From contig NW_027362767.1 of the NCBI RefSeq assembly GCF_046119375.1, forward strand, positions 137,206,001 to 137,270,000: 64,000 nt of DNA. The letters are read 5' to 3'. The translations under genes were made by a program, and so were the position numbers. Positions 23,361 through 61,533 of this stretch are shown here, piece after piece; position 1 is the stretch's first letter, and each line of letters opens with the position of its first letter. Source of the DNA: Phyllobates terribilis. Taxonomy: Eukaryota. The notes beneath the pieces are model-generated. The model did no database searches and had not been told where the DNA came from. It was given only the letters and a program-made list of their open reading frames with translations.

Positions 23361-24485
23361 CAGGTGCATCTCACTAAATTAGAATATCATCAAAAAGTTA
23401 ATTTATTTCAGTTCTTCAATACAATAAGTGAAACTCATATTATATAGAGTCAATACACACAGAGTGATCTATTTCACGTGTTTATTTCTGTTTATGAAAA
23501 CACAACAGTCATTATCTCAGTAAATTAGAATACTTTATAACAACAGATTGAAAAATGTTTTTAAAATCCGAAATGTTATCCTACTGAAATGTATGATCAG
23601 TAAATGCCCTCAATACTTGGTCGAGGCTCCTTTTGCATCAATTACTGCATCAATGCGGCAATGTGGCATGGAGGGATCAGCCTGTGGCCCTGCTGAGGGG
23701 TTATGGAAGCCCAGGTGGCTTTGATAGCCGCCTTCAGCTCGTCTGCATTGTTGGGTCTGGTGTCTCATCTTCCTCTTGACAATACCCCATAGATTCTCTA
23801 TAATAGATTCTCTATGGGGTTGAGGTCAGGCGAGTTTGCTGCCAATCAAGCACAGTGATACTGTTGCTTGTAAACCAGGTATTGGTACTTTTGGCAGTGT
23901 GGACAGGGGCCAAGTCCTGCTGGAGAATGAAACTTCCATCTCCATAAAGCTTGTCAGCAGAGGGAAGCATGAAGTGCTCTAAAATCTCCTGGTAGACGGC
24001 TGCGCTGACTTTGGTCTTGATAAAACACAGTGGACCTACACCAGCAGATGACATGGCCCCCCAAACCATCACTGATTGTGGAAACTTCACACTAGACCCC
24101 CAGCAGCTTGGATTGTGGCCTCTCCACTCTTCCTCCAGACTCTGGGACCTTGTGGAGTGTGTCAATGACTGCCTTCTGGACATCTGTCAAGTCAGCAGTC
24201 TTCCCCATGATTGTGGAGCCTACTGAAACAGACTAAGGGACCTTATTAAATGCTTAGGAAGCCTTTGTAGGTGTTTTATGTTAATTATTCTAATTTACTG
24301 AGATACTGACTTTTGTGTTTTCATTGGCTGTAAGCCATAATCATCAACATTAACAGAAATAAACCCTTGAAATCGATCACTCTGTGTGTATTGACTCTAT
24401 ATAATATAGGAGTTTCACTGTTTGTATTGAAGAACTGAAATAAATTAACTTTTTGATGATATTCTAATTTAGTGAGATGCACCTA
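23361..24485 (-). mobile_element. Internally deleted Tc1 element with long TIRs
   Basis: CAGGTGCATCTCACTAAATTAGAATATCATC... TIRs of more than 100 bp with TA flanks; transposase fragment SVKFPQSVMVWGAMSSAGVG...QQDLAPVH. Confidence 0.93.
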
Positions 24486-24843
24486 TATATTAGGGTGCAG
24501 GGAGCAGGTGATGAGGACAGACGTACTATAACTCAGGTGATGAGACTCCATAAATTAGTGCCCCCTGTACTTCTGCTGCCAGTCCTGTGAGATCTGCTGA
24601 GGCCTGTGCAGTGCGAGGCTCCTGACCAGCCTCGGTCGGCTCGCACCGGCCTCCATGTGGTGGTGGTGATCAGACCCGCCTCGGCCTTTAATGAGACTTC
24701 AGATTTCGCTGCTAATGACGAGGCCCGGAGTCACCAGATAATGGCTGGATGATGGCAGCACGTCTCACAATGTGTCAGGATCTCGTCCTCGAGCTTCACA
24801 GTCACAACTGGCAGAGACTTGGGAGACGTATTGAGAGACTCGT

Positions 24844-27800
24844 GATAAGGAAACTAGAGATCATCAGACTACTGGACCACCAGGGATCATACCAGAGATA
24901 ATAAGGAAAGTGGAGATCATCAGACTACTGGACCACCAGGAATCATACCAGAGATAATAAGGAAAGTGGAGATCATCAAACTACTGGAGCGCCATGGATC
25001 ATACCAGAGATAATAAGGAAAGTGGAGATCATCAGATTACTGGACCACCAGGGATCATACCAGAGATAATAAGGAAAGTGGAGATCATCAGACTATTGGG
25101 CCACCAGGGATCATACCAGAGATAATAAGGAAACTGGAGATCATCAGACTACTGGACCACCAGGGATCATACCAGAGATAATAAGGAAACTGGAGATCAT
25201 CAGATTACTGGACCACCAGGGATCATACCAGAGATAATAAGGAAAGTGGAGATCATCAGACTACTGGACCACCAGGAATCATACCAGAGATAATAAGGAA
25301 AGTGGAGATCATCAAACTACTGGAGCGCCATGGATCATACCAGAGATAATAAGGAAACTGGAGATCATCAGATTACTAGACCACCAGGGATCATACCAGA
25401 GATAATAAGGAAAGTGGAGATCATCAGACTATTGGGCCACCAGGGATCATACCAGAGATAATAAGGAAACTGGAGATCATCAGACTACTGGACCACCAGG
25501 GATCATACCAGAGATAATAAGGAAACTGGAGATCATCAGACTACTGGACCACCAGGGATCATACCAGAGATAATAAGGAAACTGGAGATCATCAGATTAC
25601 TGGACCACCAGGGATCATACCAGAGATAATAAGGAAAGTGGAGATCATCAGACTATTGGGCCACCAGGAATCATACCAGAGATAATAAGGAAAGTGGAGA
25701 TCATCAGACTACTGGACCACCAGGGATCATACCAGAGATAATAAGGAAAGTGGAGATCATCAGACTACTGGACCACCAAGGATCATACCAGAGATAATAA
25801 GGAAAGTGGAGATCATCAGATTACTGGACCACCAGGGATCATACCAGAGATAATAAGGAAAGTGGAGATCATCAAACTACTGGACCACCAGGGATCATAC
25901 CAGAGATAATAAGGAAACTGGAGATCATCAAAACTACTGGACCACCAGGGATCATACCAGAGATAACAAGGAAAGTGGAGATCATCAAACTACTGGACCA
26001 CCAGGGATCATACCAGAGATAATAAGGAAACCGGAGATCATCAAAACTACTGGACCACCAGGGATCATACCAGAGATAATAAGGAAAGTGTAGATCGTCA
26101 AACTACTGGACCACCAGAGATCATAGCAGAGATAATAAGGAAACTGGAGATCATCAGACTACTGGACCACCAGGGATTATACCAGAGATAATAAGGAAAC
26201 TGGAGATCATCAAACTACTGGACCACCAGGGATCATACCAGAGATAATGAGGAAACTGGAGATCATCAAACTACTGGACCACCAGAGATCATACTGTAGA
26301 TTATAAGGAAAGCGGAGATCATCAGATTACTGGACCACCAGGGATCATACCAGAAATAATAAAGAAACTGGAGATCATCAGACTACTGGACCACCAGAAA
26401 TCATACCAGAGATAATAAGGAAACTGGAGATCATCAGACTACTGGACCACCAGGGATCATACCAGAGATAATAAGGAAAGTGGAGATCATCAAACTACTG
26501 GACCACCAGGGATCATACCAGAGATAATAAGGAAACCGGAGATCATCAAAACTACTGGACCACCAGGGATCATACCAGAGATAATAAGGAAAGTGTAGAT
26601 CGTCAAACTACTGGACCACCAGAGATCATAGCAGAGATAATAAGGAAACTGGAGATCATCAGACTACTGGACCACCAGGAATCATACCAGAGATAATAAG
26701 GAAAGTGGAGATCATCAAACTACTGGACCGCCATGGATCATACCAGAGATAATAAGGAAAGTGGAGATCATCAGATTACTGGACCACCAGGGATCATACC
26801 AGAGATAATAAGGAAAGAGGAGATCATCAGATTACTGGACCACCAGGGATCATACCAGAGATAATAAGTAAAGTGGAGATCATCAGACTACTGGACCGCC
26901 ACAGATCATACCTGAGATAATAAGGAAAGTGGAGATCATCAGATTACTGGACCACCAGGTATCATACCAGAGATAATAAGGAAAGTGGAGATCATCAGAT
27001 TACTGGACCACCAGGGATCATACCAGAGATAATAAGGAAAGTGTAGATCATCAGACTACTGGACCACCAGGGATCATACCAGAGATAATAAGGAAAGTGT
27101 AGATCATCAGACTACTGGACCACCAGGGATCATACCAGAGATAATAAGGAAAGTGGAGATCATCAGACTACTGGACCACCAGGGATCATACCAGAGATAA
27201 TAAGGAAAGTGGAGATCATCAGATTACTGGACCACCAGGGATCATACCAGAGATAATAAGGAAAGTGGAGATCATCAGACTACTGGACCACCAGGGATCA
27301 TACCAGAGATAATAAGGAAAGTGGAGATCATAAGAATACTGGACCACCAGGGATCATACCAGAGATAATAAGGAAAGTGTAGATCGTCAAACTACTGGAC
27401 CACCAGAGATCATAGCAGAGATAATAAGGAAACTGGAGATCATCAGATTACTGGACCACCAGGGATCATACCAGAGATAATGAGGAAACTGGAGATCATC
27501 AAACTACTGGACCACCAGAGATCATACTGCAGATTATAAGGAAAGTGGAGATCATCAGATTACTGGACCACCAGGGATCATACCAGAGATAATAAGGAAA
27601 CTGGAGATCATCAGACTACTGGACCACCAGGGATCATACCAGAGATAATAAGGAAACTAGAGATCATCAGATTACTGGACCGCCAGGGATCATACCAGAG
27701 ATAATAAGGAAAGTGGAGATCATCAGACTACTGGACCACCAGGAATCATACCAGAGATAATAAGGAAAGTGGAGATCATCAAACTACTGGAGCGCCATGG

Positions 27801-30438
27801 ATCATACCAGAGATAATAAGTAAAGTGGAGATCATCAGACTACTGGACCACCAGGAATCATACCAGAGATAATAAGGAAAGAGGAGATCATCAGATTACT
27901 GGACCACCAGGGATCATACCAGAGATAATAAGTAAAGTGGAGATCATCAGACTACTGGACCACCAGGGATCATACCAGAGATAATAAGGAAAGTGGAGAT
28001 CATCAGATTACTGGACCACCAGGGATCATACCAGAGATAATAAGGAAAGTGGAGATCATCAGATTACTGGACCACCAGGGATCATACCAGAGATAATAAG
28101 GAAACTGGAGACCATCAGACTACTGGACCACCAGGGATCATACCAGAGATAATAAGGAAAGTGGAGATCATCAGATTACTGGACCACCAGGGATCATACC
28201 AGAGATAATAAGGAAAGTGGAGATCATCAGACTACTGGACCACCAGGAATCATACCAGAGATAATAAGGAAAGTGGAGATCATAAGAATACTGGACCACC
28301 AGGGATCATACCAGAGATAATAAGGAAAGTGGAGATCATCAGACTACTGGACCACCAGGGATCATACCAGAGATAAGGAAAGTGGAGATCATCAGACTAC
28401 TGGACCGCCAGGGATCATACCAGAGATAATAAGGAAAGTGGAGATCATCAGATTACTGGACCACCAGGGATCATACCAGAGATAATAAGGAAAGTGGAGA
28501 TCATCAGATTACTGGACCGCCATGGATCATACCCGAGATAATAAGGAAAGTGGAGATCATCAGACTACTGGACCACCAGGAATCATACCAGAGATAATAA
28601 GGAAAGTGGAGATCATCAAACTACTGGACCACCAGGGATCATACCAGAGATAATAAGGAAAGTGGAGATCATCAGACTACTGGACCGCCAGGGATCATAC
28701 CAGAGATAATAAGGAAAGTGGAGATCATCAGATTACTGGACCACCAGGGATCATACCAGAGATAATAAGGAAAGTGGAGATCATCAGATTACTGGACCAC
28801 CAGGGATCATACCAGAGATAATAAGGAAAGTGGAGATCATCAGACTACTGGACCACCGGGGATCATACCAGAGATAATAAGGAAAGTGGAGATCATCAGA
28901 TTACTGGCCCACCAGGGATCATACCAGAGATAATAAGGAAACTGGAGACCATCAGATTACTGGACCACCGGGGATCATACCAGAGATAATAAGGAAAGTG
29001 GAGATCATCAGATTACTGGACCACCAGGGATCATACCAGAGATAATAAGGAAAGTGGAGATCATCAGATTACTGGACCACCAGGGATCATACCAGAGATA
29101 ATAAGGAAAGTGGAGATCATCAGATTACTGGACCACCAGGGATCATACCAGAGATAATAAGGAAAGTGGAGATCATCAGACTACTGGACCACCAGGGATC
29201 ATACCAGAGATAATAAGGAAAGTGGAGATCATCAGATTACTGGACCACCAGGAATCATACCAGAGATAATAAGGAAAGTGGAGATCATCAGAATACTGGA
29301 CCACCAGGGATCATACCAGAGATAATAAGGAAAGTGGAGATCATCAGACTACTGGACCACCAGGGATCATACCAGAGATAATAAGGAAAGTGGAGATAAT
29401 CAGACTACTGGACCACCAGGGATCATACCAGAGATAACAAGGAAAGTGGAGATCATCAGACTACTGGACCACCAGGGATCATACCAGAGATAACAAGGAA
29501 AGTGGAGATCATCAGACTACTGGACCACCAGGGATCATACCAGAGATAATAAGGAAAGTGGAGATCATCAGATTACTGGACCACCAGGGATCATACCAGA
29601 GATAATAAGGAAAGTGGAGATCATCAGATTACTGGACCACCAGGGATCATACCAGAGATAATAAGGAAAGTGGAGATCATCAGACTACTGGACCACCAGG
29701 GATCATACCAGAGATAATAAGGAAAGTGGAGATCATCAGATTACTGGACCACCAGGAATCATACCAGAGATAATAAGGAAAGTGGAGATCATCAGATTAC
29801 TGGACCACCAGGGATCATACCAGAGATAATAAGGAAAGTGGAGATCATCAGACTACTGGACCACCAGGGATCATACCAGAGATAACAAGGAAAGTGGAGA
29901 TCATCAGACTACTGGACCACCAGGGATCATACCAGAGATAACAAGGAAAGTGGAGATCATCAGACTACTGGACCACCAGGGATCATACCAGAGATAATAA
30001 GGAAAGTGGAGATCATCAGATTACTGGACCACCAGGGATCATACCAGAGATAATAAGGAAAGTGGAGATCATCAGATTACTGGACCACCAGGGATCATAC
30101 CAGAGATAATAAGGAAAGTGGAGATCATCAGACTACTGGACCACCAGGGATCATACCAGAGATAATAAGGAAAGTGGAGATCATCAGATTACTGGACCAC
30201 CAGGAATCATACCAGAGATAATAAGGAAAGTGGAGATCATCAGATTACTGGACCACCAGGGATCATACCAGAGATAATAAGGAAAGTGGAGATCATCAGA
30301 CTACTGGACCACCAGGGATCATACCAGAGATAACAAGGAAAGTGGAGATCATCAGACTACTGGACCACCAGGGATCATACCAGAGATAACAAGGAAAGTG
30401 GAGATCATCAGACTACTGGACCACCAGGGATCATACCA
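24844..30438. repeat. 56-bp minisatellite (ggagatcatcagactactggaccaccagggatcataccagagataataaggaaagt), ~100 copies
   Basis: 56-bp periodicity throughout. Confidence 0.99.
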
Positions 30439-30974
30439 CACATTCCATCTTACAGCCACTTGCCACCGTGATATCTCAGAAATAGAGATCGTTATATGAC
30501 AAGACCGCCAGAAATTATACCACAGTTTTTCAGAAAACTGTGGTTCATCAGAGCACCATGCCACCAGGGATCAGGCTAGGGAGCACAAGGATGCTGGAGA
30601 ACCACCACTGGTAAGATCTAGGACAGGTATTTGGGGTCTCGCACTGGGCACAGAACAGTCTGAGAGCAGCGCACACCGGGGGCTTTAGGTCATCACAGGG
30701 ACAGTGGCAATACTCCGCTCTACTGACCGCACTCACCTCATCGGCTCCATGGGAGTCACCCCGGCCGAGTCCTCATTGTACCTGACCTGCAGCCTCACCT
30801 GGAAATGTAACTATGTCACAGCGATGTCTGGAATCTCAAGAATGTCAAATAATGGCGGCTACAACCCGGGGGAGCGAGGAGGACGTCACCTGTGTGACAG
30901 CACGGCACAGGAGCGTCCCCCTCACAGCTCCGCAGTCAGGGGGCGCGAAATAACACAGCACCCCAACATTCAGA

Positions 30975-31921
30975 GTGTCAGTGTCATTATCCTATACCCC
31001 GAGTGTCAGCGTCATTATCCTGTACCCCCAGTGTCAGCGTCATTATCCTGTACCCTCAGTGTCATTATCCCGTACCCCCAGTGTCAGTGTCATTATCCTG
31101 TACCCCCAGTGTCAGTGTCATTATCCTGTACCCCTAGTGTCATTATCCTGTACCCCTAGTGTCATTATCCTGTACCCCCAGTGTCAGTGTCATTATCCTG
31201 TACCCCTAGTGTCATTATCCTGTACCCCCAGTGTTAGCGTCATTATCCCTTACCCCCAGTGTCAGTGTCATTATCCTGTACCCTCAGTGTCATTCTCCCA
31301 TACCCCAGTGTCAGTGTCATTATCCTGTACCCCCAGTGTCAGTGTCATTATCCCGTACCCCCAGTGTCAGTGTCATTATCCTGTACCCTCAGTGTCAGCG
31401 TCATTATCCCGTACCCCCAGTGTCATTATCCTGTACCCCCAGTGTTAGCGTCATTATCCCTTACCCCCAGTGTCAGTGTCATTATCCTGTACCCTCAGTG
31501 TCATTCTCCCATACCCCAGTGTCAGTGTCATTATCCCGTACCCCCAGTGTCAGTGTCATAATCCTGTACCCCCAGTGTCAGCGTCATTATCCTGTACCCC
31601 CAGTGTCAGTGTCATTATCCCGTACCCCCAGTGTCAGTGTCATTATCCTGTACCCTCAGTGTCAGTGTCATTATCCTGTACCCTCAGTGTCAGCGTCATT
31701 ATCCCGTACCCCCAGTGTCAGCGTCATTATCCTGTACCCCCAGTGTCATTATCCAGTACCCCCAGTGTCAGCGTCATTATCCCGTACCCCCAGTGTCAGC
31801 GTCATTATCCTGTATCCCCAGTGTCAGTGTCATTATCCTGTACCCCCAGTGTCATTATCCCGTACCCCCAGTGTCAGTGTCATTATCCTGTACCCTCAGT
31901 GTCATTATCCCGTACCCCCAG
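30975..31921. repeat. Modular 22/28-bp minisatellite (cagtgt)n-cattatcctgtacccc
   Basis: Direct inspection; it explains the overlapping Cys/Ser/Val-rich ORFs. Confidence 0.95.
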
Positions 31922-33143
31922 TTTCCGTCCCCCTGTACGCCCCTATATGTTGGGGACACCGGGTGATGTGTATACAGCAGTTATGTAATGACAGTTAACC
32001 CTTCCTGTGCCGCGGGGCTGAGCTGCTGTGAGGCAGACAATGGCGCTGTGTTGGTGTCACGTGCGGCTCCTCGCTCTGCATTGTGTGTCTCTGCGGGGGA
32101 CGGTGCAGCGCTGGAGATACGTGTGACGGCCATTGTTGGCTGTTTCAGGAGGTCGCTGAACACGAGGCGACGGTGCAGACATCTGACAGCCTGCGGCGTG
32201 CGCACACATTGGGGACCGTGCCCGAGTTGTGGGGGGTCAGCGTAGGCTCCGGCCCTTTAACACATTAGGTTTTCTGCTGACACATGGCGGTCTGTCCCTG
32301 CCGCCGCTGACGTCCGTCCCGGGGTAACACAATTACAGCTTCTGTACATTATCAGCTTATTACATTACAGCTCCTATAATCCAATCCTGTGAGAACAGGA
32401 GAACCCGAGCCGGCGGCCATGTGTGAGGAGCGAGGACGCCGTCACGTACTATCGGGACCTCACGACAAGCAGAGAGCGGCAGAGGTGGCAGGGGCTGGCC
32501 GCCTACCGGAGAGGTCACCTCTCCTGGCATGTCTGATTATTATATTGTTCCTCTATTACCCCTCCTGGAAATGCAGGAATAAACTGACAACTGAGTGTAC
32601 AGGGGGCCAACAAGCACTGACCAGAGACCATCAGCATGTAGGGACCATCCATACCAATAAAGGGAATTGTAACCCTCAGTCACCACTTACTTTATCCAGT
32701 TCCAGGAGGAGTAACAGAGGGGTATTATTAGAAAGTATCAGTATTGACTAAAACAATGATCTATGTCAGTATGTCATTGAGATATATCATTAACAGAATG
32801 GTCAATGACGGAGCGTCCGGACATTGTGCCGTAACGTCCTCTGCTAATGTAATTACTGGGAAAGCTCGAGGCCAAAGAGGAATCACCACGTCCCCGGAGC
32901 AGAGGCCTCCACATCCTGAGACCTGGAGCAGCACTACAACCCCCAGCATGTCTCTGAAGAGGGATGATATTTCCCATGATGCAGTTTCATATTTTCAGTT
33001 CTCTTTGAACCTCGGGAAAGTGGCTCTGAGGCGGAGGATTGCCGCAGGCGGAGGACGGTCTGTGCCCTTACATGGGACTGCAGGCAATTACCAGCATTAT
33101 TCCCAGGCCTGGCAGGCCGATCCCCAGGGATGATAATCAACGC

Positions 33144-33484
33144 CAGCACAGGAGGCGACACTGCAGGCAGCACAGGAGGCGACGCTGCCGGCCGCACAGG
33201 AGGCGACGCTGCCGGCCGCACAGGAGGCGACTCTGCAGGCCGCACAGGAGGCGACGCTGCCGGCCGCACAGGAGGCGACGCTGCCGGCAGCACAGGAGGC
33301 GACGCTGCCGGCCGCACAGGAGGCGACGCTGCCGGCCGCACAGGAGGCGACGCTGCCGGCAGCACAGGAGGCGACGCTGCCGGCCGCACAGGAGGCGACG
33401 CTGCAGGCAGCACAGGAGGCGACGCTGCCGGCTGCACAGGAGGCGACGCTGCCGGCAGCACAGGAGGCGACACTGCAGGCAGCA
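33144..33484. repeat. 24-bp GC-rich minisatellite (cgcacaggaggcgacgctgccggc), ~14 copies
   Basis: 8-aa periodic ORFs on both strands (TGGDAAGR, PAASPPVR). Confidence 0.95.
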
Positions 33485-33553
33485 CGTACCACTCTGCTGA
33501 GCTACCATGCATCCGAGCAGACATCACTGTACCAGAGGACAAAAGACAGATAT

Positions 33554-34020
33554 GATAGGATTAGATACACGGTTTAGCAAGCAGTATCATAAAGGATTAG
33601 ATACATGACTCAGCAGACAGTATCAGTAGGATTAGATACATGACTCAGCAGACAGTATCAGTAGGATTAGACTGTGGGTACCATACTTTGTGTGTGTGTG
33701 TGGGGGGGGGGGGGGGGCGGGACTGTGTGGTACAGTACTGTGTGTGGGGGATTGTGAGGTACAATACTGTGTGTGGGGGATTGTGAGGTACAATACTGTG
33801 TGTGGGGGATTGTGAGGTACAATACTGTGTTAGCGTACTGTGGGGTACCATACTGTGTGTGGGGGAACTGTGGGTTACCGTACTGTGTGTGGGGGGACTG
33901 TATGGTAATGTACTTTGTGTGGGGGGACTGTATGGTAGCGTACTGTGTGTGGGGGAACTGTGAGGAACAGTACTGTGTGTGGGGGGACTGTAGGGTACTG
34001 TGTGTGGGGGGACTGGACAC
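33554..34020. repeat. Short cagcagacagtatc/ggattagatac repeats followed by ~31-bp tactgtgtgtggggg repeats
   Basis: Direct inspection; the first motif recurs at ~36065-36100 and, inverted, at 49214-49972. Confidence 0.8.
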
Positions 34021-35569: not shown

Positions 35570-38500
35570 CTGTGTAAGGACACCATAAACCAGGTGGAGG
35601 GCGACATGGAGGAACGAGAAGACCTGATCCAGGGAGGAGTACAGTCTAGAGACACATCGTGTAAGAACAACACCACCCAACATCCAGAGACGAGACACCG
35701 AGCCAGACTCCGACTCCTCATCCGCCTCCTCAATACCGCCGCTCCGCAGTCCTGCAACATGGGACTATATTAATGCTGACAACCAGCTGTATCCCCTGTG
35801 TGAGATGTTGTCAGCCCCGCCCCCTAGTGATGACATCACTGATATAATTAGATAATAACTGGGGTACATGTGCGAATGATATGATAAGCCAGTGCTCTGA
35901 CAACTATGACTTTTCAGTTACTGTGCAACTACAACTCCCAGCATACACATGTCCACCTCACCAAGTGATTGCAGCGTACACATTGTCCTATAGTCACAGC
36001 CTGTACATGTGAGGAGTGAGAGTTTATCGCCACCTGCTGGGCACAACCTTGTACTGCACCCAGAGACAGCAGCTCTGCCGACAGTATCACACAGGATAGG
36101 ATTTAGGGGTATCATCTCTCCTTGTGGAAAGTGCCAAGCTCGTGTAAGGAGACTTAGTGGCCATGCAGTGCTCCTCTGGGAAATTATATATACAAATTGT
36201 CTCTTCAGAGAAGTAGGGGACTTGAACTCAATATTGACCCTTTAACAAGCCCAAAAGGCGATGTTACCCCTTATATCTCATCAGAGGCCTCTCATCCAGC
36301 ATAATCAGACCTGTTGATTTGCACTGCTGAGGGGTAAACACCCAGAAACAAGTGTCAACAAATACAGATGTATCTTACCCCGTGCGTCTCCTTCCTCGTC
36401 TTGTTTCGGGAGGTACAGATCCACCAATTCTTCTGCGTGGCTCACAGCCAGTTCAGCTCCCAATCTCACCACCTCCCAGGCCCTGAGGGTCCCCAGAGAA
36501 AGCATCCCTAAAGAAGTGACTTCATAGACTTCTCTGACCATAGTCTGGGTCCTGTTTATCATGTCCTGTGCCCGACCCATCGCCCGCGTCCTCACCGCGC
36601 TCACACCCATCACCAGCTTGATGTGGATATCTGCCGCCACCTATAATATGAGATTAGCAATGAGCGTGAACGAGGATAAATGATCCCAATATTCAATGGA
36701 CACAATGACAGGTCAGGACAACGATGACGTCACATATATATATTATTTACCTCATCCGCTGGTTCGTCAAGCACAGGGAGACGATCCTCCAGCTCATCAA
36801 CAACACATAACGCAACACCATTCATCACCGCAACTAGTCAGGAAAAAAACAGTACCCAATGAGATCCAAAGTATCACCGCTCTATGTCCTGGTGATCTGG
36901 GTGTAGTACTGATCACTATAGTGACCTCTCCCCAGTGATGTATATACAGTGATATCACCGCTCTATGTCCTGGTGATCGGGGGGGATACTGATCACTATA
37001 GTGACCTCTCTATGTCCTGGTGATCGGGGGGGTAGTACTGATCACTATAGTGACCTCTCCCCAGTGATGTATATACAGTAATATCACCGCTCTATGTCCT
37101 GGTGATCGGGGGGGATACTGATCACTATAGTGACCTCTCTATGTCCTGGTGATCGGGGGGGTAGTACTGATCACTATAGTGACCTCTCCCCAGTGATGTA
37201 TATACAGTAATATCACCGCTCTATGTCCTGGTGATCGGGGGGGTAGTACTGATCACTATAGTGACCTCTCCCCAGTGATGTATATACAGTGATATCACCG
37301 CTCTATGTCCTGGTGATCGGGGGGGGGGGGGGGGGGGTAGTACTGATCACTATAGTGGTCTCTCCCCAGGGATGTATATACAGTGATATCACTGCTCTAT
37401 GTCCTGGTGATCTGGGTGTAGTACTGATCACTATAGTGACCTCTCCCCAGTGATGTATATACAGTGATATCACCGCTCTATGTCCTGGTGATCTGGGTGT
37501 AGTACTGATCACTATAGTGACCTCTCCCCAGTGATGTATATACAGTGATATCGCCGCTCTATGTCCTGGTGATCTGGGTGTAGTACTGATCACTATAGTG
37601 ACCTCTCCCCAGTGATGTATATACAGTGATATCGCCGCTCTATGTCCTGGTGATCTGGGTGTAGTACTGATCACTATAGTGACCTCTCCCCAGTGATGTA
37701 TATACAGTGATATCACCGCTCTATGTCCTGGTGATCGGGGGGTTGTACTGATCACTATAGTGACCTCTCCCCAGTGATGTATATACAGTGATATCACCGC
37801 TCTATGTCCTGGTGATCGGGGGGTTGTACTGATCACTATAGTGACCTCTCCCCAGTGATGTATATACAGTGATATCACCGCTCTATGTCCTGGTGGTCTG
37901 GGTGTAGTACTGATCACTATAGTGACCTCTCCCCAGTGATGTGTATACAGTGATATCACCGCTCTATGTCCTGGTGGTCTGGGTGTAGTACTGATCACTA
38001 TAGTGACCTCTCTCCAGTGATGTATATACAGTGATATCACCGCTCTATGTCCTGGTGATCTGGGTGTAGTACTGATCACTATAGTGACCTCTCCCCAGTG
38101 ATGTACATACAGTGATATCACCGCTCTATGTCCTGGTGATCTGGGTGTAGTACTGATCACTATAGTGACCTCTCCCCAGTGATGTGTATACAGTGATATC
38201 ACCGCTCTATGTCCTGGTGATCGGGGGGTTGTACTGATCACTATAGTGACCTCTCCCCAGTGATGTATATACAGTGATATCACCGCTCTATGTCCTGGTG
38301 ATCGGGGGGTTGTACTGATCACTATAGTGACCTCTCCCCAGTGATGTATATACAGTGATATCACCGCTCTATGTCCTGGTGATCGGGGGGTTGTACTGAT
38401 CACTATAGTGACCTCTCCCCAGTGATGTACATACAGTGATATCACCGCTCTATGTCCTGGTGATCTGGGTGTAGTACTGATCACTATAGTGACCTCTCCC

Positions 38501-40729
38501 CAGTGATGTGTATACAGTGATATCACCGCTCTATGTCCTGGTGATCTGGGAGGATACTGATCACTATAGTGACCTCTCCCCAGTGATGTATATACAGTGA
38601 TATCACCGCTCTATGTCCTGGTGATCGGGGGGTTGTACTGATCACTATAGTGACCTCTCCCCAGTGATGTATATACAGTGATATCACCGCTCTATGTCCT
38701 GGTGATCGGGGGGTAGTACTGATCACTATAGTGACCTCTCCCCAGTGATGTACATACAGTGATATCACCGCTCTATGTCCTGGTGATCTGGGTGTAGTAC
38801 TGATCACTATAGTGACCTCTCCCCAGTGATGTATATACAGTGATATCACCGCTCTATGTCCTGGTGATCGGGGGGGTAGTACTGATCACTATAGTGGTCT
38901 CTCCCCAGGGATGTATATACAGTGATATCACTGCTCTATGTCCTGGTGATCGGAGGGTAGTACTGATCACTATAGTGACCTCTCCCCAGTGATGTATATA
39001 CAGTGATATCACCGCTCTATGTCCTGGTGATCGGAGGGTAGTACTGATCACTATAGTGACCTCTCCCCAGTGATGTATATACAGTGATATCACCGCTCTA
39101 TATCCTGGTGATCGGAGGGTAGTACTGATCACTATAGTGACCTCTCCCCAGTGATGTATATACAGTGATATCACCGCTCTATGTCCTGGTGATCGGGGGG
39201 GTAGTACTGATCACTATAGTGACCTCTCCCCAGTGATGTATATACAGTGATATCACCGCTCTATGTCCTGGTGATCGGGGGGGTAGTACTGATCACTATA
39301 GTGACCTCTCCCCAGTGATGTATATACAGTGATATCACCGCTCTATGTCCTGGTGATCGGGGGGTAGTACTGATCACTATAGTGACCTCTCCCCAGTGAT
39401 GTATATACAGTGATATCACCGCTCTATGTCCTGGTGATCGGGGGGTTGTACTAATCACTATAGTGACCTCTCTATGTCCTGGTGATCGGGGGGGGGGGTT
39501 GTACTGATCACTATAGTGACCTCTCTATGTCCCGGTGATCGGGGGGGTTGTACTGATCACTATAGTGACCTCTCTATGTCCTGGTGATAGGGGGGTAATA
39601 CTGATCACTATAGTGACCTCTCCCCAGTGATGTATATACAGTGATATCACCGCTCTATGTCCTGGTGATCGGGGGGCAGTATTGATCACTATAGTGACCT
39701 CTCTATGTCCTGGTGATAGGGGGGTTGTACTGATCACTATAGTGACCTCTCTTTGTCCTGGTGATAGGGGGGTAGTACTGAACACTATGGTGACCTCTAC
39801 GAGTCCACACGTCCTGCGCTGTATGCGCCTGGCACTGGTCTCCTGGGCTGCAGAAGATTATTTCTGTCTTGTAGACATCAGTGATCATTGACAGTCTGTG
39901 TTTTCCTGTCTGTGCCCGGCTCCCGCCTGTTTAGACCTCAGCAGTGTCTTCTTTCTGTGCTCACATGGCCGTGGCAGAATCCGCCCTGGCTCAGCTGTCT
40001 TGTGCCCTCAGGCACAGCCAGCCCCTGGCATCAGATTAGAGAGTCAGCGAGAGTCGGGCGTAGCTGGAGGTTCTGCTCTGATGGCCCATTATAGAAGGGC
40101 AGGCTAACATGCGGCCCCCTGATATCGCCGTCACGAGCCGTGCCACGTGCCACTGCTTCTTCCTCCTGCCGGGCACATTAACTAGATTCCTGCTCCCCTT
40201 TTATAAAATGGGGTCAGAGATTTGGCACCGGTCTGACCACTTCATTACGTGACTGTCCCGCAGGTCTGCCTCATGTGGGGATATAGTGCCAGGAATGTGC
40301 CCACCACTAACAATCTAATCCCAAAACCACCAAATAAACTGTAAAGTATTACCATGGACCTGACAGTCGGGCAGTGCCCATGCATAAAACCAATAGGGCA
40401 GCATCATAGATCCCACTGGACTTACGCTGAGGTTCCACAAGCTTTAAAATGGGAGAGACCCCGAGAGCGGCCGCTCCACCCACTGCTCGCACCCCTCTCT
40501 CCGAAACATCGCAGACGTACTCCACCAGGGGGTGCACAGACTTCACATCCTGGTACGCAAACGACAGGATCTGAGAGGCCGACTGGACGAGGGGCAAGCG
40601 GGCAACCCGCAGAACCACGCTGACCTAGACAACAACACATGTATGTAACAGAGAGATGGATGGATCATAGAGAGATAATAGACAGACGGACATGATGCTT
40701 ACAGTCTGGTTTTCTCCTCTTTCAGCCAT
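35570..40729 (-). CDS. Perilipin (PAT-family) gene, five coding exons (251 aa so far), probable plin6 orthologue; 3' exons unresolved
   Basis: Exons 40729-40703 (MAERGENQT), 40624-40426 (199 nt, PAT domain VSVVLRVARLPLVQSASQILSFAYQDVKSVHPLVEYVCDVSERGV...LKLVEPQ), 36833-36751 (83 nt, ...DELEDRLPVLDEPADE), 36640-36379 (262 nt, ...SHAEELVDLYLP...) and 35751-35570 (182 nt). All GT-AG, phases 0/1/0/1/0, no stops. The 83-nt and 182-nt exons match PLIN2 exon sizes. Confidence 0.92.
36881..39797. repeat. 81-bp minisatellite in a perilipin intron, ~36 copies
   Basis: 81-bp spacing (e.g. 37441 vs 37522); each unit contains the palindromes TCACTATAGTGA and GTGATATCAC. Confidence 0.98.
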
Positions 40730-44356: not shown

Positions 44357-47300
44357 TCAGGGCTTCATCTTCAGCCAGGGGTGCAGGATGGTGAGGATGC
44401 CCAGTATGGAGGAGGTCAGGCCGCACAGGCCCACCACACCCGGGTTGGTCTTGTACAGTCCCAGTTTGTCCAGCGGGATGAAGAGGTCGCAGGCATTCTT
44501 CACAACGTCCAGCAGGAGTGGGGGGTTACCCCGCAGGACGTGCACTAGAAGACGCAGCTGGAGTGCCAGGATGTGCTGCGGAGGGCGATCGCCCCGGGTC
44601 ACTGCGCCATTCTCCATCTTGGAGGAGGAGCGTTTTGCGCCAGTTTCTGTTTCCATCAGTAATTTTATCTCATAGAGATCACGGCTCAGGTTCATGATGA
44701 GAGAGAAAAGGTAATACCTGCGGAGGAGAAGAGAGGGTGACCACCGCTCCACTCACAGCCAGAGCTGTATGTACAATATGAACGGAAAATAAACTCTAGC
44801 CTCCTCCAGAGCTGCAACTATAAAGAATGCCACTCGGAAAGAGACTGATGATACATGACTGGTGTGTAAAATAGTGAAAGTAGATATAAAGGTGACTAAT
44901 TACAAATGCAGCTCTACATGTAACTTGAAATGTGAATGCAGCTATGGAGGTGAGTGGAGTACTATGCTAGTGTTGCAGGTCCATGCAGGAGCGCCCACCT
45001 GAAGGAGCGCTGGCTCCACTTCTCCTGGTCCATGTTCTTGGACAGTCCGGTCTTCCCCAACCACAGGATGTTATCGCAGGCGAAGTACATGGCTCTGTTC
45101 AGGTGGCTGACGGTGATGCAGAGCCGCAGTACCACATCTGACAGGTGGATGGCGCGCTTCGCTGACTCCAAGGCGTCCACAGAGTTCCCCAGTCTGAACA
45201 CTGCAGATAGAGGAGGGTGTCTGTAATACGGGAGCCGAGCGGCAGCAGGTGGAGAATACAGAGGGGCAGAGGTGGTACTCACACTTCCGGCCCAGGCTCA
45301 GGTGCGCTTCCAACTGTTTGATGGTGGTAATGACATCAGTACTGACCCCATTCTTCTGCAGCGAGTACCCCAATAACGTGCAGGCATACTGGGCCGCTCT
45401 GCAAGACACAGAGGTGTGCGGGTAAGAGGGGCGACAAGCAGAGGATGTCACCGGGAGGACTTACCGTGTCACTACAGCCAGTATGGCCGCCATGAGCACA
45501 TCGCTCCCGGACTGCAGGAAAGGATGTCACCCCCATACCAGACAGAAATCCCCCTCTAAGGAACTACACATCCCAGCATGCCCTGCTCAGCTCACCAGGA
45601 GACCACCCGCTGGGACTCACTAGAGGCTGCACGGGAGCCGCTGATCTCACACAGAGGCCCGGGTCCCACTAGCGAATCATATCCGAGGCGAGACCGCCAA
45701 ATGCAATATGCTGATGACCCTCAGCTCCTGTCTCTGCTGCGGGCGTGAGCTGTCAGTGCTCTGTGCTCCTGTCTCTGCTGCGGGTGTGAGCTGACTGTCA
45801 GTGCTCTGTGCTCCTATCTCTGCTGCGGGTGTGAGCTGAATGTCAGTGCTCTGTGCTCCTGTCTCTGCTGCGGGCGTGAGCTGAATGTCAGTGCTCTGTG
45901 CTCCTGACTCTGCTGCGGGCGTGAGCTGAATGTCAGTGCTCTGTGCTCCTGTCTCTGCTGCGGCCGTGAGCTGAATGTCAGTGCTCTGTGCTCCTGTCTC
46001 TGCTGCGGGCGTGAGTTGAATGTCAGCGCTCTCTGCTCCTGTCTCTGCTGCGGGCGTGAGCTGTCAGTGCTTTGTGCTCCTGTCTCTGCTGTGGGCGTGA
46101 GCTGACTGTCAGTGCTCTGTGCTCCTGTCTCTGCTGAGAGCGTGAGCTGACTGTCAGTGCTCTGTGCTCCAGTCTCTGCTGCAGGCGTGAGCTGTCACTG
46201 CTCTGTGCTCCTGTCTCTGCTGTGGGCGTGAGCTGACTCTCAGTGCTCTGTGCTCCTGCTCTGCTGCGGGCGTGAGCTGACTGTGAGGGCTCTGTGCTCC
46301 TGTCTCTGCTGCGGGTGTGAGCTGACTGTCAGTGCTCTGTGCTCCTATCTCTGCTGCGGGTGTGAGCTGAATGTCAGTGCTCTGTGCTCCTGTCTCTGCT
46401 GCGGGCGTGAGCTGTCAGTGCTTTGTGCTCCTGTCTCTGCTGCGGGCGTGAGTTGACTGTCAGTGCTCTGTGCTCCTGTCTCTGCTGAGAGCGTGAGCTG
46501 ACTGTCAGTGCTCTGTGCTCCAGTCTCTGCTGCGGGCGTGAGCTGACTGTCAGTGCTCTGTGCTCCTGTCTCTGCTGCAGGCGTGAGCTGACTGTCACTG
46601 CTCTGTGCTCCTGTCTCTGCTGTGGGCGTGAGCTGACTCTCAGTGCTCTGTGCTCCTGCTCTGCTGCGGGCGTGAGCTGACTGTGAGGGCTCTGTGCTCC
46701 TGTCTCTGCTGCGGGCATGAGCTGACTGTCAGTGCTCCGTGCTCCTGTCACTGCTGCGGGTATGAGCTGACTGTCAGTGCTCTGTGCTCCTGTGTCTGCT
46801 GCGGACGTGCGCTGACTGTCAGTGCTCTGTGCTCCTGTGTCTGCTGCGGACGTGCGCTGACTGTCATTGCTCTGTGCTCCTGCTCTGTTGCGGACGTGCG
46901 CTGACTGTCAGTGCTTTGTGCTCCTGTCTCTGCTGCGGGCGTGAGCTGACTGTCAGTGCTCTGTGCTCCTGTCTCTGCTGAGAGCGTGAGCTGACTGTCA
47001 GTGCTCTGTGCTCCGGTCTCTGCTTTGGGCGTGAGCTGACTGTCAAGGATCTGTGCTCCTGTCTCTACTTTGGGCGTGAGCTGACTGTCAGTGCTCTGTG
47101 CTCCAGTCTCTGCTGCGGGCGTGAGCTGACTGTCAGTGCTCTGTGCTCCTGTCTCTGCTGCAGGCGTGAGCTGACTGTCACTGCTCTGTGCTCCTGTCTC
47201 TGCTGTGGGCGTGAGCTGACTCTCAGTGCTCTGTGCTCCTGCTCTGCTGCGGGCGTGAGCTGACTGTGAGGGCTCTGTGCTCCTGTCTCTGCTGCGGGCG

Positions 47301-50132
47301 TGAGCTGACTGTCAGTGCTCCGTGCTCCTGTCACTGCTGCGGGTGTGAGCTGACTGTCAGTGCTCCTGTCTCTGCTGCAGGTGTGAGCTGACTGTCAGTG
47401 CTCTGTGCTCCTGTGTCTGCTGCGGACGTGCGTTGACTGTCATTGCTCTGTGCTCCTGTCTCTGCTGCGGGTGTGAGCTGTCACTGCTCTGTGCTCCTGT
47501 CTCTGCTGCGGGCGTGAGCTGACTGTCAGTGCTCTGTGCTCCTGTCTCTGCTGCAGGCATGAGCTGACTGTCAGTGCTCCTGTCTCTGCTGCGGGTGTGA
47601 GCTGACTCTCAGTGCTCTGCGCTCCTGTCTCTGCTGTGGGTGTGAGCTGTCAGTGCTCTGTGCTCCTATCTCTGCTGCGGGTGTGATCAGAGTGTCAGTG
47701 CTCTGTGCTCCTGCGGGCGTGAGCTGTCAGTGCTCTATGCTCCTGTCTCTGCTGCAGGCATGAGGTGACTGTCAGTGCTCTGTGCTCCTGTCTGCTGCGG
47801 GCGTGAGCTGACTGTCAGTGCTTTGTGCTCCTGTCTCTGCTGCGGGCGTGAGCTGTCACTGCTCTGTGCTCCTGCTCTGTTGCGGGCGTGAGCAGTCAGT
47901 GCTCTGTGCTCCAGTCTCTGCTGCGGGCGTGAGCTGTCAGTGCTCTGTGCTCCAGTCTCTGCTGAGGGCGTGAGCTGACTGTCAGTGCTTTGTGCTCCTG
48001 TCTCTGCTGCGGGCGTGAGCTGTCACTGCTCTGTGCTCCTGCTCTGCTGCGGGCGTGAGCTGACTGTCACTGCTCTGTGCTCCTGTCTCTGCAGCGGGTG
48101 TGATCAGAGTGTCAGTGCTCTGTGCTCCTGTCTCTGCTGCGGGCGTGAGCTGACTGTCACTGCTCTGTGCTCCTGTCTCTGCTGCGGGCATAAGCTGACT
48201 GTCAAGGATCTGTGCTCCTGTCTCTGCTTTGGGCGTGAGCTGACTGTCAGTGCTCTGTGCTCCAGTCTCTGCTGCGGGCGTGAGCTGACTGTCACTGCTC
48301 TGTGCTCCTGTCTCTGCTGCGGGCGTGAGCTGACTGTCACTGCTCTGTGCTCCTGTCTCTGCTGCGGGCGTGAGCTGTCAAGGATCTGTGCTCCTGTCTC
48401 TGCTTTGGGCGTGAGCTGACTGTCAGTGCTCTGTGCTCCAGTCTCTGCTGCGGGCGTGAGCTGTCAGTGCTCTGTGCTCCTGTCTCTGCTGCGGGCGTGA
48501 GCTGACAGTCAGTGCTCTGTGCTCCAGTCTCTGCTGCGGGCGTGAGCTGTCAGTGCTCTGTGCTCTTGTCTCTGCGGCGGGCGTGAGCTGACTGTCAGTG
48601 CTTTGTGCTCCTGTCTCTGCTGCGGGTGTGAGCCGTCACTGCTCTGTGCTCCTGCTCTGTTGCGGGTGTGAGCTGTCAGTGCTCTGTGCTCCTGTCTATG
48701 CTGCGGGCGTGAGCTGACTGTCACTGCTCTGTGCTCCTGTCTCTGCTGCGGGCGTGAGCTGACTGTCAGTGCTCTGTGCTCCTGTCTCTGCTGCGGGCGT
48801 GAGCTGACTGTCAGTGCTCCGGTCCTCTCACATCAGGGAATCTGCGGAAGAGAAGCAGAAAGTAATTTCTCCATCTCCTCTGTTGCTGGCGTCGGTGGGA
48901 ATCGCACTGCACTCGTATGATATCCGAGTGCAGTGCTATGTTTCACATGCACCCATAGACTTATATACGTGCGATCTGAATCCAGCGTGCTGCTCTTTTT
49001 TTAGTCTGATTGCGAACTGATTGGAGCAGGAAAAAAAAAACACAAATGAGAACACGAGCAGAAGCTCACAAGGGGGCGCCACGCCGGACATGGACTCCTA
49101 GATCTGTGTGTAATGAAAGAGCCAAACAGTGCGACACCACAAAGCACAGCGACCCCGGACTGCTGCACCACGGAGAAAGGAGCCGGTGTACTGACCAGGG
49201 AGAACCGCGCCCCGCATCTAATCCCATCATGTGTGATACTGTCTGCTGTATCTAATCCCGTCCGGTGTGATACTGTCTGCTGTGTCTAATCCCGTCCGGT
49301 GTGATACTGTCTGCTGTGTCTAATCCCGTCCGGTGTGATACTGTCTGCTGTGTCTAATCCCGTCCGGTGTGATACTGTCTGCTGTGTCTAATCCCGTCCG
49401 GTGTGATACTGTCTGCTGTATCTAATCCTGTCCGGTGTGATACTGTCTGCTCTATCTAATCCCGTCCGATGTGATACTGTCTGCTGTATCTAATCCCGTC
49501 TGATGTGATACTGTCTGCTGTATCTAATCCCGTCTGATGTGATACTGTCTGCTGTATCTAATCCTGTCCGGTGTGATACTGTCTGCTGTGTCTAATCCCG
49601 TCCGGTGTGATACTGTCTGCTGTGTCTAATCCCGTCCGGTGTGATACTGTTTGCTGTATCTAATCCCGTCTGATGTGATACTGTCTGCTGTATCTAATCC
49701 CGTCTGATGTGATACTGTCTGCTGTATCTAATCCCGTCTGAAGTGATACTGTCTGCTGTATCTAATCCTGTCCAATGTGATACTGTCTGCTGTATCTAAT
49801 CCTGTCCGGTGTGATACTGTCTGCTGCGTCTAATCCCGTCTGATGTGATACTGTCTGCTGTATCTAATCCCGTCCGGTGTGATACTGTCTGCTGTATCTA
49901 ATCCTGTCCGGTGTGATACTGTCTGTCGTATCTAATCCTCTCCTGTGTGACACTGTCTGCTGAGCTGTATCTAGGCCCTTGCTGAGCCTTGTAGTCCTCC
50001 GCGGTCATTCTTGTATTTGTGGTTCTATCTATCTGCAGGGTATGCTGGGCTCAGTAGTAGTGGCCGGGGAGGTCACCTGAGGAGCCGCTCCTTGGCCTGG
50101 CTCTGGCTGCTGAACCGGACCCAGGAGTCCAT
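44357..50132 (-). CDS. PEX11B: Peroxisomal biogenesis factor 11 beta, 4 coding exons, 244 aa
   Basis: Exons 50132-50077 ([19 protein letters not shown]), 45398-45283 ([10 protein letters not shown]), 45200-44999 ([26 protein letters not shown]) and 44717-44357 ([13 protein letters not shown]...HPWLKMKP). The 56/116/202-nt exon sizes are as in human PEX11B. Confidence 0.96.
45724..48819. repeat. 45/41-bp minisatellite in PEX11B intron 1, ~70 copies
   Basis: Unit ctgtcagtgctctgtgctcctgtctctgctgcgggcgtgagctga. Confidence 0.98.
49214..49972. repeat. 34-bp minisatellite in PEX11B intron 1, ~22 copies
   Basis: Unit tgtgatactgtctgctgtgtctaatcccgtccgg. Confidence 0.96.

Positions 50133-53031
<2,899 letters not shown>

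Positions 53032-57105: not shown

Positions 57106-61533
<4,428 letters not shown>

What the first reader, a model, noticed from the sequence alone, without database searches (positions are those of the whole stretch)
35570..40729. Intact perilipin in tandem with PEX11B: candidate amphibian orthologue of the 'teleost-specific' pigment-droplet gene plin6
Seen: five canonical, stop-free exons encoding a PAT domain, a helical repeat region and the EELVDLYLP motif, on the same strand as PEX11B and directly downstream of it. Known: PLIN1 lies in the same tandem layout downstream of PEX11A, and the human PEX11B/LIX1L/RBM8A block has no perilipin. Plin6 was described (Granneman et al. 2017, eLife) as a teleost-restricted perilipin from the early vertebrate genome duplications that coats carotenoid droplets in xanthophores. 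Inference: this is the PEX11B-linked ohnologue retained in a frog, and so a candidate gene for carotenoid-based skin colour. The six-frame track shows only fragments because a 2.9-kb satellite splits the gene.
Basis: partly seen in the sequence, partly recalled or inferred. Interest (0 to 1): 0.92.

Follow-up and report, generated by a model that had tools for sequence, protein, structure and literature searches.

The report
Frog orthologue of fish pigment-droplet perilipin
The golden poison frog keeps an intact copy of plin6, a gene for the protein that coats yellow and red pigment droplets in fish skin and was thought to be missing from all land vertebrates, so it is now a testable candidate for frog and turtle colour.

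Summary
They lie directly downstream of PEX11B on the same strand, and a 2.9-kb satellite sits in intron 2.

One correction: the reading frame is still open at 35570. A sixth coding exon at 14534-14283 completes a 334-residue protein. This is RefSeq XP_073495358.1 of Phyllobates terribilis, named 'perilipin-2-like'.

- **Phylogeny:** a careful maximum-likelihood tree puts the frog protein in a 100/100 clade. The clade also holds 9 other frogs, a turtle, a lungfish, a shark, a sturgeon, gar 'Perilipin 6' and teleost 'perilipin 6'. It excludes PLIN1, PLIN2 and PLIN3/5. AU tests reject placing the tetrapod genes with PLIN2, PLIN1 or PLIN3/5 (p 2e-5, 6e-4, 8e-7).
- **Synteny:** the order PEX11, PLIN, then a convergent Ras-like gene is shared by four frogs and a shark. 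Eel plin6 keeps the Ras-like neighbour. Bird PLIN1 sits in a paralogous PEX11-PLIN1-Ras-like block.
- **Protein features:** as in fish Plin6, only the N-terminal two thirds match the Pfam perilipin profile, and the C-terminal tail carries a conserved RRxS site. Frog and turtle copies lack the penultimate coding exon of fish.

A role on pigment droplets is inferred, not shown. No paper in the searched library reports plin6 in tetrapods.

The parts
40703..40729 (-). plin6 coding exon 1 (start codon, 9 codons)
   Evidence: The ATG is followed by a GTAAGC donor. Residues 1-9 are identical to XP_073495358.1.
40426..40624 (-). plin6 coding exon 2 (core of the PAT domain)
   Evidence: Pfam Perilipin E=1.4e-18, profile positions 7-71. 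Borders are an AG acceptor and a GTAAGT donor.
36876..39798 (.). 2.9-kb satellite inside intron 2 (81-bp unit with 129-bp and 48-bp variants)
   Evidence: Tandem Repeats Finder gives 26.4 copies of an 81-bp unit at 96% match, plus flanking variant arrays.
36751..36833 (-). plin6 coding exon 3
   Evidence: Borders are AG and GTAAAT, and the exon is entered in phase 1. tblastn with the RefSeq protein covers residues 76-104.
36379..36640 (-). plin6 coding exon 4 (amphipathic helical region, EELVDLYLP motif)
   Evidence: Weak Pfam Perilipin match, E=0.0026, profile positions 123-187. It is 100% identical to the RefSeq protein at residues 104-191.
35570..35751 (-). plin6 coding exon 5 (acidic linker and start of a long helix); the frame stays open at its GTAAGG donor
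   Evidence: AlphaFold2 models residues 180-206 as disordered and 208-267 as a helix.
17846..34015 (.). intron 5 region dominated by tandem arrays: 45-bp x118, 56-bp x100, 28-bp x35, 24-bp x14 and 29-bp x10
   Evidence: No trace of the extra fish exon was found here by tblastn.
   Evidence: tblastn with the RefSeq protein, residues 252-334, is identical from the first residue of the exon onward (98% for the whole hit, which also reaches four mismatched intron-side residues). The acceptor is TTGCAG and entry is in phase 0.
44360..50165 (-). PEX11B, directly upstream on the same strand (coding exons lie within 50165-50076, 45460-45074, 45297-44965 and 44752-44360)
   Evidence: Pfam PEX11 E=3.1e-25 and 8e-18. 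The open segments are listed. It is 64-77% identical to the PEX11 gene of Spea at the same relative position.
9954..11089 (+). Ras-family GTPase gene, convergent with the 3' end of plin6; a conserved neighbour of plin6 from shark to eel to turtle
   Evidence: Pfam Ras E=4e-19. tblastn to the neighbour genes gives 85% in Spea, 75% in turtle and 67% in eel. The same layout is seen in the shark.
51591..53028 (+). LIX1L exons, divergent from PEX11B
   Evidence: Pfam LIX1 E=2e-22 and 5e-32.
60624..60995 (+). RBM8A (Y14) exons carrying the RNA recognition motif
   Evidence: Pfam RRM_1 E=1.2e-15. The gene name comes from reading the peptide and from the known human gene order, and was not tested further.

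Best explanation
This is the Phyllobates terribilis orthologue of plin6. It is the fourth perilipin copy from the early vertebrate genome duplications and has been described as restricted to ray-finned fish. The gene is intact, with six coding exons spread over 26.4 kb on the minus strand, and encodes 334 residues. It still sits in its ancestral position between PEX11B and a convergent Ras-like gene.

The protein has four parts:
- an N-terminal PAT domain followed by long amphipathic helices (residues about 12-179);
- a disordered acidic linker;
- one further long helix (208-267);
- a disordered serine-rich tail carrying the protein kinase A consensus RRHS (286-289).

Shown here: the gene structure, the orthology, the synteny, and that the frog shares the features that set fish Plin6 apart from PLIN2/3.

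Inferred from the zebrafish work (PMC5342826) and from general perilipin biology: the helices bind the phospholipid monolayer of neutral-lipid droplets. In skin xanthophores the protein would coat carotenoid droplets, help them concentrate pigment and cluster, and be switched by PKA phosphorylation of the tail. I put orthology at about 0.9. Given orthology, I put a carotenoid-droplet role in frog xanthophores at about 0.45.
For: Gene model: canonical splice sites and phases, no stops, and identity to XP_073495358.1.

Family: Pfam Perilipin E=2.4e-36 for the whole protein.

Phylogeny: a careful ML tree of 53 perilipins gives a 100/100 split. On one side are 10 frogs, a turtle, a lungfish, a shark, a sturgeon, gar 'Perilipin 6' and 6 teleosts, 4 of them named 'perilipin 6'. 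On the other side are PLIN1, PLIN2, PLIN3/5-like proteins and a lamprey protein. Inside the clade the branching follows the species tree (names). AU tests reject the three alternative placements.

Synteny: PEX11, PLIN and a convergent Ras-like gene lie in this order in Spea (with LIX1 beyond), Ranitomeya, this window and the shark Heterodontus. Anomaloglossus shows PEX11-PLIN followed by a convergent gene with no Pfam hit on record. The PLIN-Ras-like pair is also seen in a turtle and in eel plin6. A paralogous PEX11-PLIN1-Ras-like block exists in a bird.

Shared Plin6 features: every clade member tested matches only positions of about 2-258 of the 403-position Pfam profile, whereas PLIN2 matches 3-400. 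The RRHS site aligns with RRxS in turtle, lungfish, shark, sturgeon and gar.

Constraint: full-length open reading frames are predicted in at least 11 frog species, with partial models in five more, and related proteins (262-371 aa, some partial) in 14 turtle species.

Fold: AlphaFold2 gives helices at 12-179 and 208-267 with a disordered linker and tail, and no compact domain (pTM 0.24).
Against: There is no expression, localisation or phosphorylation evidence for any tetrapod copy. The Ranitomeya diet study lists plin6 among known colour genes and reports no differential expression of any of them, but it does not say how, or whether, the frog gene was identified (PMC12715915).

The frog and turtle proteins lack the roughly 90-100-residue penultimate exon present in eel and lumpfish plin6. 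The frog clade also sits on a long stem branch of 0.87. Function may therefore have shifted.

The second C-terminal site is degenerate in P. terribilis (RRCQS, against RRQS in Hyla and Dendropsophus).

The functionally studied zebrafish protein itself was not retrieved. The three zebrafish PKA sites could not be mapped onto the frog tail. dN/dS could not be computed because no DNA was served for the other dendrobatids.
Confidence: 0.8

Rival explanations
1. It is a true plin6 orthologue, but in tetrapods it has taken on a job unrelated to pigment. It could, for example, coat ordinary triglyceride or cholesteryl-ester droplets in some other tissue. The loss of one exon would mark that change.
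For: Frogs and turtles lack the penultimate coding exon of fish plin6. The frog clade has a long stem branch. C-terminal RRxS sites vary in number and position among frogs, and Spea has only KKRT. No tetrapod expression data exist in the searched literature.
Against: In this sampling, the tetrapods found to keep the gene are frogs and turtles. From my own knowledge, not tested here, both groups have carotenoid-bearing dermal xanthophores. The PAT domain, the helical region and one RRxS site are conserved from shark to frog.
Confidence: 0.3
2. It is a lineage-specific duplicate of PLIN1, PLIN2 or PLIN3, as the RefSeq names 'perilipin-1-like', 'perilipin-2-like' and 'perilipin-3-like' suggest, that landed next to PEX11B by chance.
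For: The automatic names differ from species to species. Similarity to every perilipin is highest in the PAT domain.
Against: AU tests reject grouping with PLIN2 (p 1.8e-5), PLIN1 (p 6e-4) and PLIN3/5-like proteins (p 8e-7). The Plin6 clade has 100/100 support. The same three-gene layout is found in a shark. Only two thirds of the Pfam profile is matched, as in fish Plin6 and unlike PLIN2.
Confidence: 0.03
3. It is a decaying or untranscribed relic whose open frame in this species survives by chance, with exon 6 joined to it wrongly by the annotation pipeline.
For: The gene is broken up by huge satellite-filled introns and a sequence gap. No transcript evidence could be examined here. A plin6-like contig of unknown origin shows exons that look decayed.
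Against: There are six canonical exons without stops. The orthologous six-exon structure, with the same large last intron, is seen in Spea and a turtle. Full-length predictions exist in many frogs and turtles separated by long divergence times. The exon-6 peptide is conserved among dendrobatids and hylids.
Confidence: 0.05

Closest known systems
Plin6 of ray-finned fish (zebrafish zgc:162150; Granneman et al. 2017, eLife, PMC5342826)
   Same: It falls in the same clade. It has the same 3' Ras-like neighbour as eel plin6. It has a PAT domain plus helical region but no full-length match to the Pfam profile. RRxS sites lie in a disordered C-terminal tail. The positions of the first five coding-exon borders match.
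   Different: The frog protein has 334 residues, against 450-507 in the named teleost proteins recovered here and 490 reported for zebrafish. The penultimate coding exon is absent. The 5' neighbour is PEX11B, not a C2-domain (syt11-like) gene. Only one clean PKA consensus site remains in this species. Xanthophore expression and droplet binding are unknown.
PLIN1 (adipocyte perilipin), downstream of PEX11A
   Same: It lies in a paralogous three-gene block, PEX11-PLIN-Ras-like, in the same orientations. Both are perilipins regulated, or predicted to be regulated, by PKA sites in the C-terminal part (PMC5342826).
   Different: It forms a separate clade, and the AU test rejects joining the frog gene to it (p 6e-4). 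PMC5342826 reports no significant similarity between mammalian PLIN1 and teleost Plin6 in the C-terminal regulatory region.
PLIN2 (adipophilin), the name given by RefSeq ('perilipin-2-like')
   Same: Both have the N-terminal PAT domain and amphipathic helices.
   Different: PLIN2 matches the whole 403-position Pfam profile, including the C-terminal part, whereas the frog protein matches positions 3-236 only. The AU test rejects a PLIN2 affinity (p 1.8e-5). A separate PLIN2-clade protein exists in the dendrobatid Ranitomeya.

Membership tests
Plin6 | Perilipin (PAT) domain at the N-terminus | tested here: met
   Pfam PF03036 gives E=1.4e-18 for exon 2 alone and E=2.4e-36 for the whole protein.
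Plin6 | Falls inside the clade that holds gar and teleost proteins named perilipin 6, apart from PLIN1, PLIN2 and PLIN3/5 | tested here: met
   The careful ML tree gives a 100/100 split. AU tests reject placement with PLIN2, PLIN1 or PLIN3/5.
Plin6 | Lies in the chromosome segment orthologous to the fish plin6 segment (the human chromosome 1 paralogon) | tested here: met
   It is flanked by PEX11B, LIX1L and RBM8A. It shares the Ras-like 3' neighbour with eel plin6 and the PEX11 5' neighbour with the shark clade member. The 5' neighbour differs in the two teleosts examined.
Plin6 | Conserved PKA consensus sites in the C-terminal region | tested here: inconclusive
   RRHS at residues 286-289 aligns with RRxS in turtle, lungfish, shark, sturgeon and gar. 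The second site is degenerate in this species. Correspondence to the three zebrafish sites could not be checked because the zebrafish protein was not retrieved.
Plin6 | Similarity to other perilipins limited to the N-terminal part | tested here: met
   Frog, turtle, shark, sturgeon, lungfish, eel and lumpfish proteins match only positions of about 2-258 of the 403-position Pfam profile, whereas PLIN2 matches 3-400.
Plin6 | Fish-type gene structure with seven coding exons | tested here: not met
   Eel and lumpfish have an extra penultimate exon of about 90-100 codons. Frogs and turtles have six coding exons, and no trace of the extra exon was found in intron 5. This is a difference in structure rather than a published criterion for membership.
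Plin6 | Expressed in xanthophores, bound to carotenoid droplets, phosphorylated on PKA activation | not testable with these tools
   No expression or protein data are available here, and none was found in the searched literature.
PLIN2 | Groups with PLIN2 and has the full-length perilipin profile | tested here: not met
   AU p=1.8e-5 against a PLIN2 grouping. The Pfam match stops at profile position 236.
PLIN1 | Groups with PLIN1, downstream of PEX11A | tested here: not met
   AU p=6e-4. The adjacent PEX11 gene is 64-77% identical to the Spea gene at the same position, but only 40-49% identical to the PEX11 gene next to bird PLIN1.

The most novel reading that the evidence does not exclude
Plin6 is the ancestral carotenoid-droplet coat of jawed vertebrates rather than a fish speciality. 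Its patchy survival in tetrapods would track the presence of carotenoid-storing skin xanthophores. It is kept, minus one exon, in frogs and turtles, and was not recovered from mammals, birds or squamates in the searches run here. The gene would then be a shared genetic handle on yellow and red skin colour from sharks to poison frogs and painted turtles.
Probability: 0.35. Interest if true: 0.7.

Novelty: new member of a known kind. Interest (0 to 1): 0.55.

Why it matters
The paper that defined Plin6 states that tetrapods lack it. [quoted passage not shown] A 2021 paper still calls it unique to ray-finned fish (PMC8460263).

The evidence here shows orthologues in many frogs, in turtles of both suborders, in a lungfish and in a shark. 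These are hidden under inconsistent automatic names. This corrects the evolutionary account: the loss is lineage-specific within tetrapods, not a single loss at the base of lobe-fins. It also documents a three-gene block, PEX11-PLIN-Ras-like, that was duplicated in the early vertebrate genome duplications.

The result gives colour genetics in amphibians and turtles a concrete candidate gene with a known knockout phenotype in zebrafish. The gene model itself is already in RefSeq, so the advance is one of identity and distribution, not a new kind of gene.

Tried and rejected
- **Pfam on short exons.** Exons 3 and 5 alone gave nothing. They are too short, and this is not evidence against the model.
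- **Word-indexed protein searches.** With the frog protein the search reached only close frogs plus one unnamed 443-aa perilipin from a Logan read-set assembly, later placed in the PLIN2 clade. With the clade alignment it added teleost 'perilipin 6' but no salamander, caecilian, squamate, bird or mammal. These searches are not exhaustive, so the blanks do not prove absence.
- **Context look-ups.** They failed for sturgeon and Xenopus. They returned gene tables but no DNA for shark, lungfish, Ranitomeya and Anomaloglossus. dN/dS among dendrobatids could therefore not be computed.
- **Fish-specific exon.** tblastn of the fish, shark, lungfish and turtle proteins against the window found no trace of it.
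- **Solved structures.** The PDB sequence search with the frog protein gave no hit.
- **ESM Atlas.** The look-up returned only generic perilipin clusters.
- **Hydrophobic moment.** A sliding hydrophobic-moment scan was uninformative.
- **Supplements.** No supplementary files are held for the Ranitomeya study.
- **One wasted search.** A literature search with min_terms=2 returned irrelevant papers.
- **Ras-like neighbour.** I considered RIT1, the human neighbour of SYT11, but RERG and RIT1 tie in the PDB search, so I left it unnamed.


Full report
**What is in the sequence**

The feature lies on the minus strand. Reading the reverse complement of 35200-40800 gives five open segments with canonical borders:
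- Exon 1, 40729-40703: ATG, 9 codons, GTAAGC donor.
- Exon 2, 40624-40426.
- Exon 3, 36833-36751.
- Exon 4, 36640-36379.
- Exon 5, 35751-35570.

The exon phases fit and the sum is 753 bases, or 251 codons, with no stop. Exon 2 alone hits Pfam Perilipin at E=1.4e-18. Exon 4 hits weakly (E=0.0026) and carries EELVDLYLP. Tandem Repeats Finder shows arrays built on an 81-bp unit from 36876 to 39798, all inside intron 2.

**The rest of the gene and its identity**

An exhaustive HMMER search with exon 2 returned a 334-residue protein that is 100% identical. It is RefSeq XP_073495358.1, 'perilipin-2-like', from Phyllobates terribilis. Its first 251 residues are the five exons.

tblastn places residues 252-334 at 14534-14283. 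This exon sits behind a TTGCAG acceptor in phase 0 and ends in TAG. Intron 5 is 21 kb long. It holds a 180-N run (35035-35214, left untouched) and at least five tandem arrays. The coding region spans 26.4 kb.

**Neighbours**

- PEX11B lies upstream on the same strand, with four exon pieces within 50165-44360 (Pfam PEX11 E=3e-25 and 8e-18).
- LIX1L follows on the plus strand at 51.6-53.0 kb.
- An RRM gene that reads as RBM8A lies near 60.6-61.0 kb.
- A Ras-family gene on the plus strand at about 9.95-11.1 kb converges on the 3' end of the perilipin gene.

**Phylogeny**

Names for the search hits came from exact look-ups and two further searches.

A quick tree of 65 perilipins and a careful tree of 53 (IQ-TREE, LG+C20+F+G4 by PMSF, 414 columns) agree. 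Support for the split is 100/100 in the careful tree and SH-aLRT 99 in the quick tree. On one side are:
- ten frogs;
- the turtle Platysternon;
- the lungfish Protopterus;
- the shark Heterodontus;
- a sturgeon;
- gar 'Perilipin 6' (W5MJ87);
- six teleosts, four of them named 'perilipin 6'.

On the other side are PLIN1, PLIN2, PLIN3/5-like proteins and a lamprey perilipin.

Inside the clade the order follows the species tree. Sturgeon, gar and teleosts branch in that order, and turtle groups with frogs. This is what orthologues should show.

AU tests reject trees that force the frog and turtle genes together with PLIN2 (delta lnL 70, p 1.8e-5), PLIN1 (29, p 6e-4) or the PLIN3/5-like group (66, p 8e-7). 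A separate PLIN2-clade protein from the dendrobatid Ranitomeya is in the tree, so the gene studied here is an additional family member in dendrobatids.

**Synteny**

| Species | Gene order around the perilipin |
|---|---|
| Spea bombifrons (frog) | LIX1 - PEX11 - perilipin - convergent Ras-like |
| Ranitomeya (frog) | PEX11 - perilipin - convergent Ras-like |
| Anomaloglossus (frog) | PEX11 - perilipin, then a convergent gene with no Pfam hit on record |
| Heterodontus (shark) | PEX11 - perilipin - convergent Ras-like |
| Platysternon (turtle) | perilipin - small unassigned gene - convergent Ras-like |
| Conger (eel, named perilipin 6) | C2-domain gene - plin6 - convergent Ras-like |
| Cyclopterus (lumpfish) | C2-domain gene - plin6 |

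The frog Ras-like peptide is 85% identical to that of Spea, 75% to that of the turtle and 67% to that of the eel. The C2-domain neighbour in teleosts fits the syt11b flank reported for zebrafish in PMC5342826.

The PEX11 linkage is therefore ancestral for jawed vertebrates and was broken on the 5' side in teleosts. The 3' neighbour ties teleost plin6 to the frog gene.

A bird PLIN1 gene lies in the same arrangement, PEX11 - PLIN1 - convergent Ras-like. Its Ras-like gene is 53% identical to the frog one, and its PEX11 gene is 40-49% identical.

**Protein features**

All clade members tested match only positions of about 2-258 of the 403-position Pfam perilipin profile. PLIN2 matches 3-400.

The tail of every member carries RRxS sites. 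The frog RRHS at 286-289 aligns with RRxS in turtle, lungfish, shark, sturgeon and gar. A second site that is RRQS in Hyla and Dendropsophus reads RRCQS in P. terribilis.

AlphaFold2 with a 25-sequence alignment gives helices at 12-179 and 208-267, a disordered acidic linker at 180-206 and a disordered tail. There is no compact domain (mean pLDDT 63, pTM 0.24).

**A structural difference from fish**

Eel and lumpfish plin6 have an additional penultimate coding exon of about 90-100 codons. In the alignment, shark, lungfish, sturgeon and gar proteins contain that segment. Frogs and turtles do not.

In the turtle and in this window the last intron is very large: 32 kb in the turtle and 21 kb here. 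In Spea it is at most about 12 kb, because exon 5 did not score above the filter. tblastn finds no remnant of the exon in the window.

**Distribution in tetrapods**

A search with the turtle protein found related proteins in 13 further turtle species, including side-necked and soft-shelled turtles. All carry names such as 'perilipin-2-like'. Frog members cover dendrobatids, hylids, ranoids, pelobatoids, Discoglossus and Xenopus.

No salamander, caecilian, squamate, bird or mammal member was recovered. The searches that carry names are word-indexed and capped, so this is not proof of absence.

One GC-rich contig of unknown species (Logan run SRR18112698) has a plin6-like exon 2, while exons 3 and 4 have lost conserved residues.

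**What is known**

PMC5342826 states that plin6 orthologues were found only in ray-finned fish. It also states that tetrapods appear to lack them and that rearrangements in the lobe-fin lineage probably destroyed the gene. It describes the zebrafish protein as 490 residues long, with a PAT domain and three C-terminal PKA sites, the last of them conserved in gar.

In zebrafish, Plin6 coats carotenoid droplets in xanthophores and is phosphorylated on PKA activation. It is needed to concentrate carotenoids and to cluster the droplets. PMC8460263 repeats that it is unique to ray-finned fish.

Of the 35 papers in the library that contain 'plin6', none reports a tetrapod orthologue. The one frog paper only lists plin6 among known colour genes that were not differentially expressed.

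**Verdict**

The interpretation as the PEX11B-linked ohnologue, that is plin6, is supported by phylogeny, by tests of the alternative placements, by synteny on both sides and by shared protein features.

The proposed role in carotenoid colour is a reasonable inference from zebrafish but is untested. The lost exon and the long frog stem branch leave room for a changed function.

The gene model already exists in RefSeq under a misleading name. The finding is a new lineage for a known family, with a structural variant, rather than a new kind of gene.

Noticed in passing
window 9954-11089 (+); L003 29282-30755; L004 30333-31471; L001 59722-61110; L006 16485-17840: A Ras-family GTPase gene converges on the 3' end of plin6 in frog, turtle, shark and eel. 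A 53%-identical paralogue sits in the same position next to bird PLIN1. The subfamily is unresolved, because RERG and RIT1 tie in a PDB sequence search. PEX11-PLIN-Ras-like looks like a three-gene block duplicated in the early vertebrate genome duplications.
   Followed up: partly
L004 22261-22563 and L002 15530-15799, compared with window intron 5 (14535-35569): Eel and lumpfish plin6 have a penultimate coding exon of about 90-100 codons. Frog and turtle orthologues lack it, and no remnant was detectable in the window.
   Followed up: yes
L005 2085-3620 (Logan run SRR18112698, species unknown, 59% GC): A contig with a plin6-like exon 2 (42% identical to turtle). The exon 3- and exon 4-like stretches that follow have lost residues that are nearly invariant elsewhere. 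It may be a decaying plin6 in another amniote.
   Followed up: partly
window 958-4168 (-): Part of an LTR-type retrotransposon. An 814-codon open frame carries protease, reverse transcriptase and RNase H domains (Pfam E down to 1e-36). A 312-codon PNMA/gag-like frame lies upstream of it.
   Followed up: yes
window 17846-23162, 24845-30438, 45724-48819, 58605-60417 and others: Much of the non-coding DNA in this window consists of separate long tandem arrays with units of 20-81 bp and up to 125 copies. They fill plin6 intron 5 and PEX11B intron 1.
   Followed up: no
proteins P0001-P0012, P0195-P0207: RefSeq and GenBank name orthologues of this one gene 'perilipin-1-like', 'perilipin-2-like', 'perilipin-3-like', 'Perilipin-2' or 'uncharacterized', depending on the species. 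This hides the family from keyword searches.
   Followed up: yes
window 5840-8912: A palindrome with a 20-bp unit amplified about 125-fold (6138-8640). It was already noted by the scan as s1-205068 and is unrelated to this gene.
   Followed up: no
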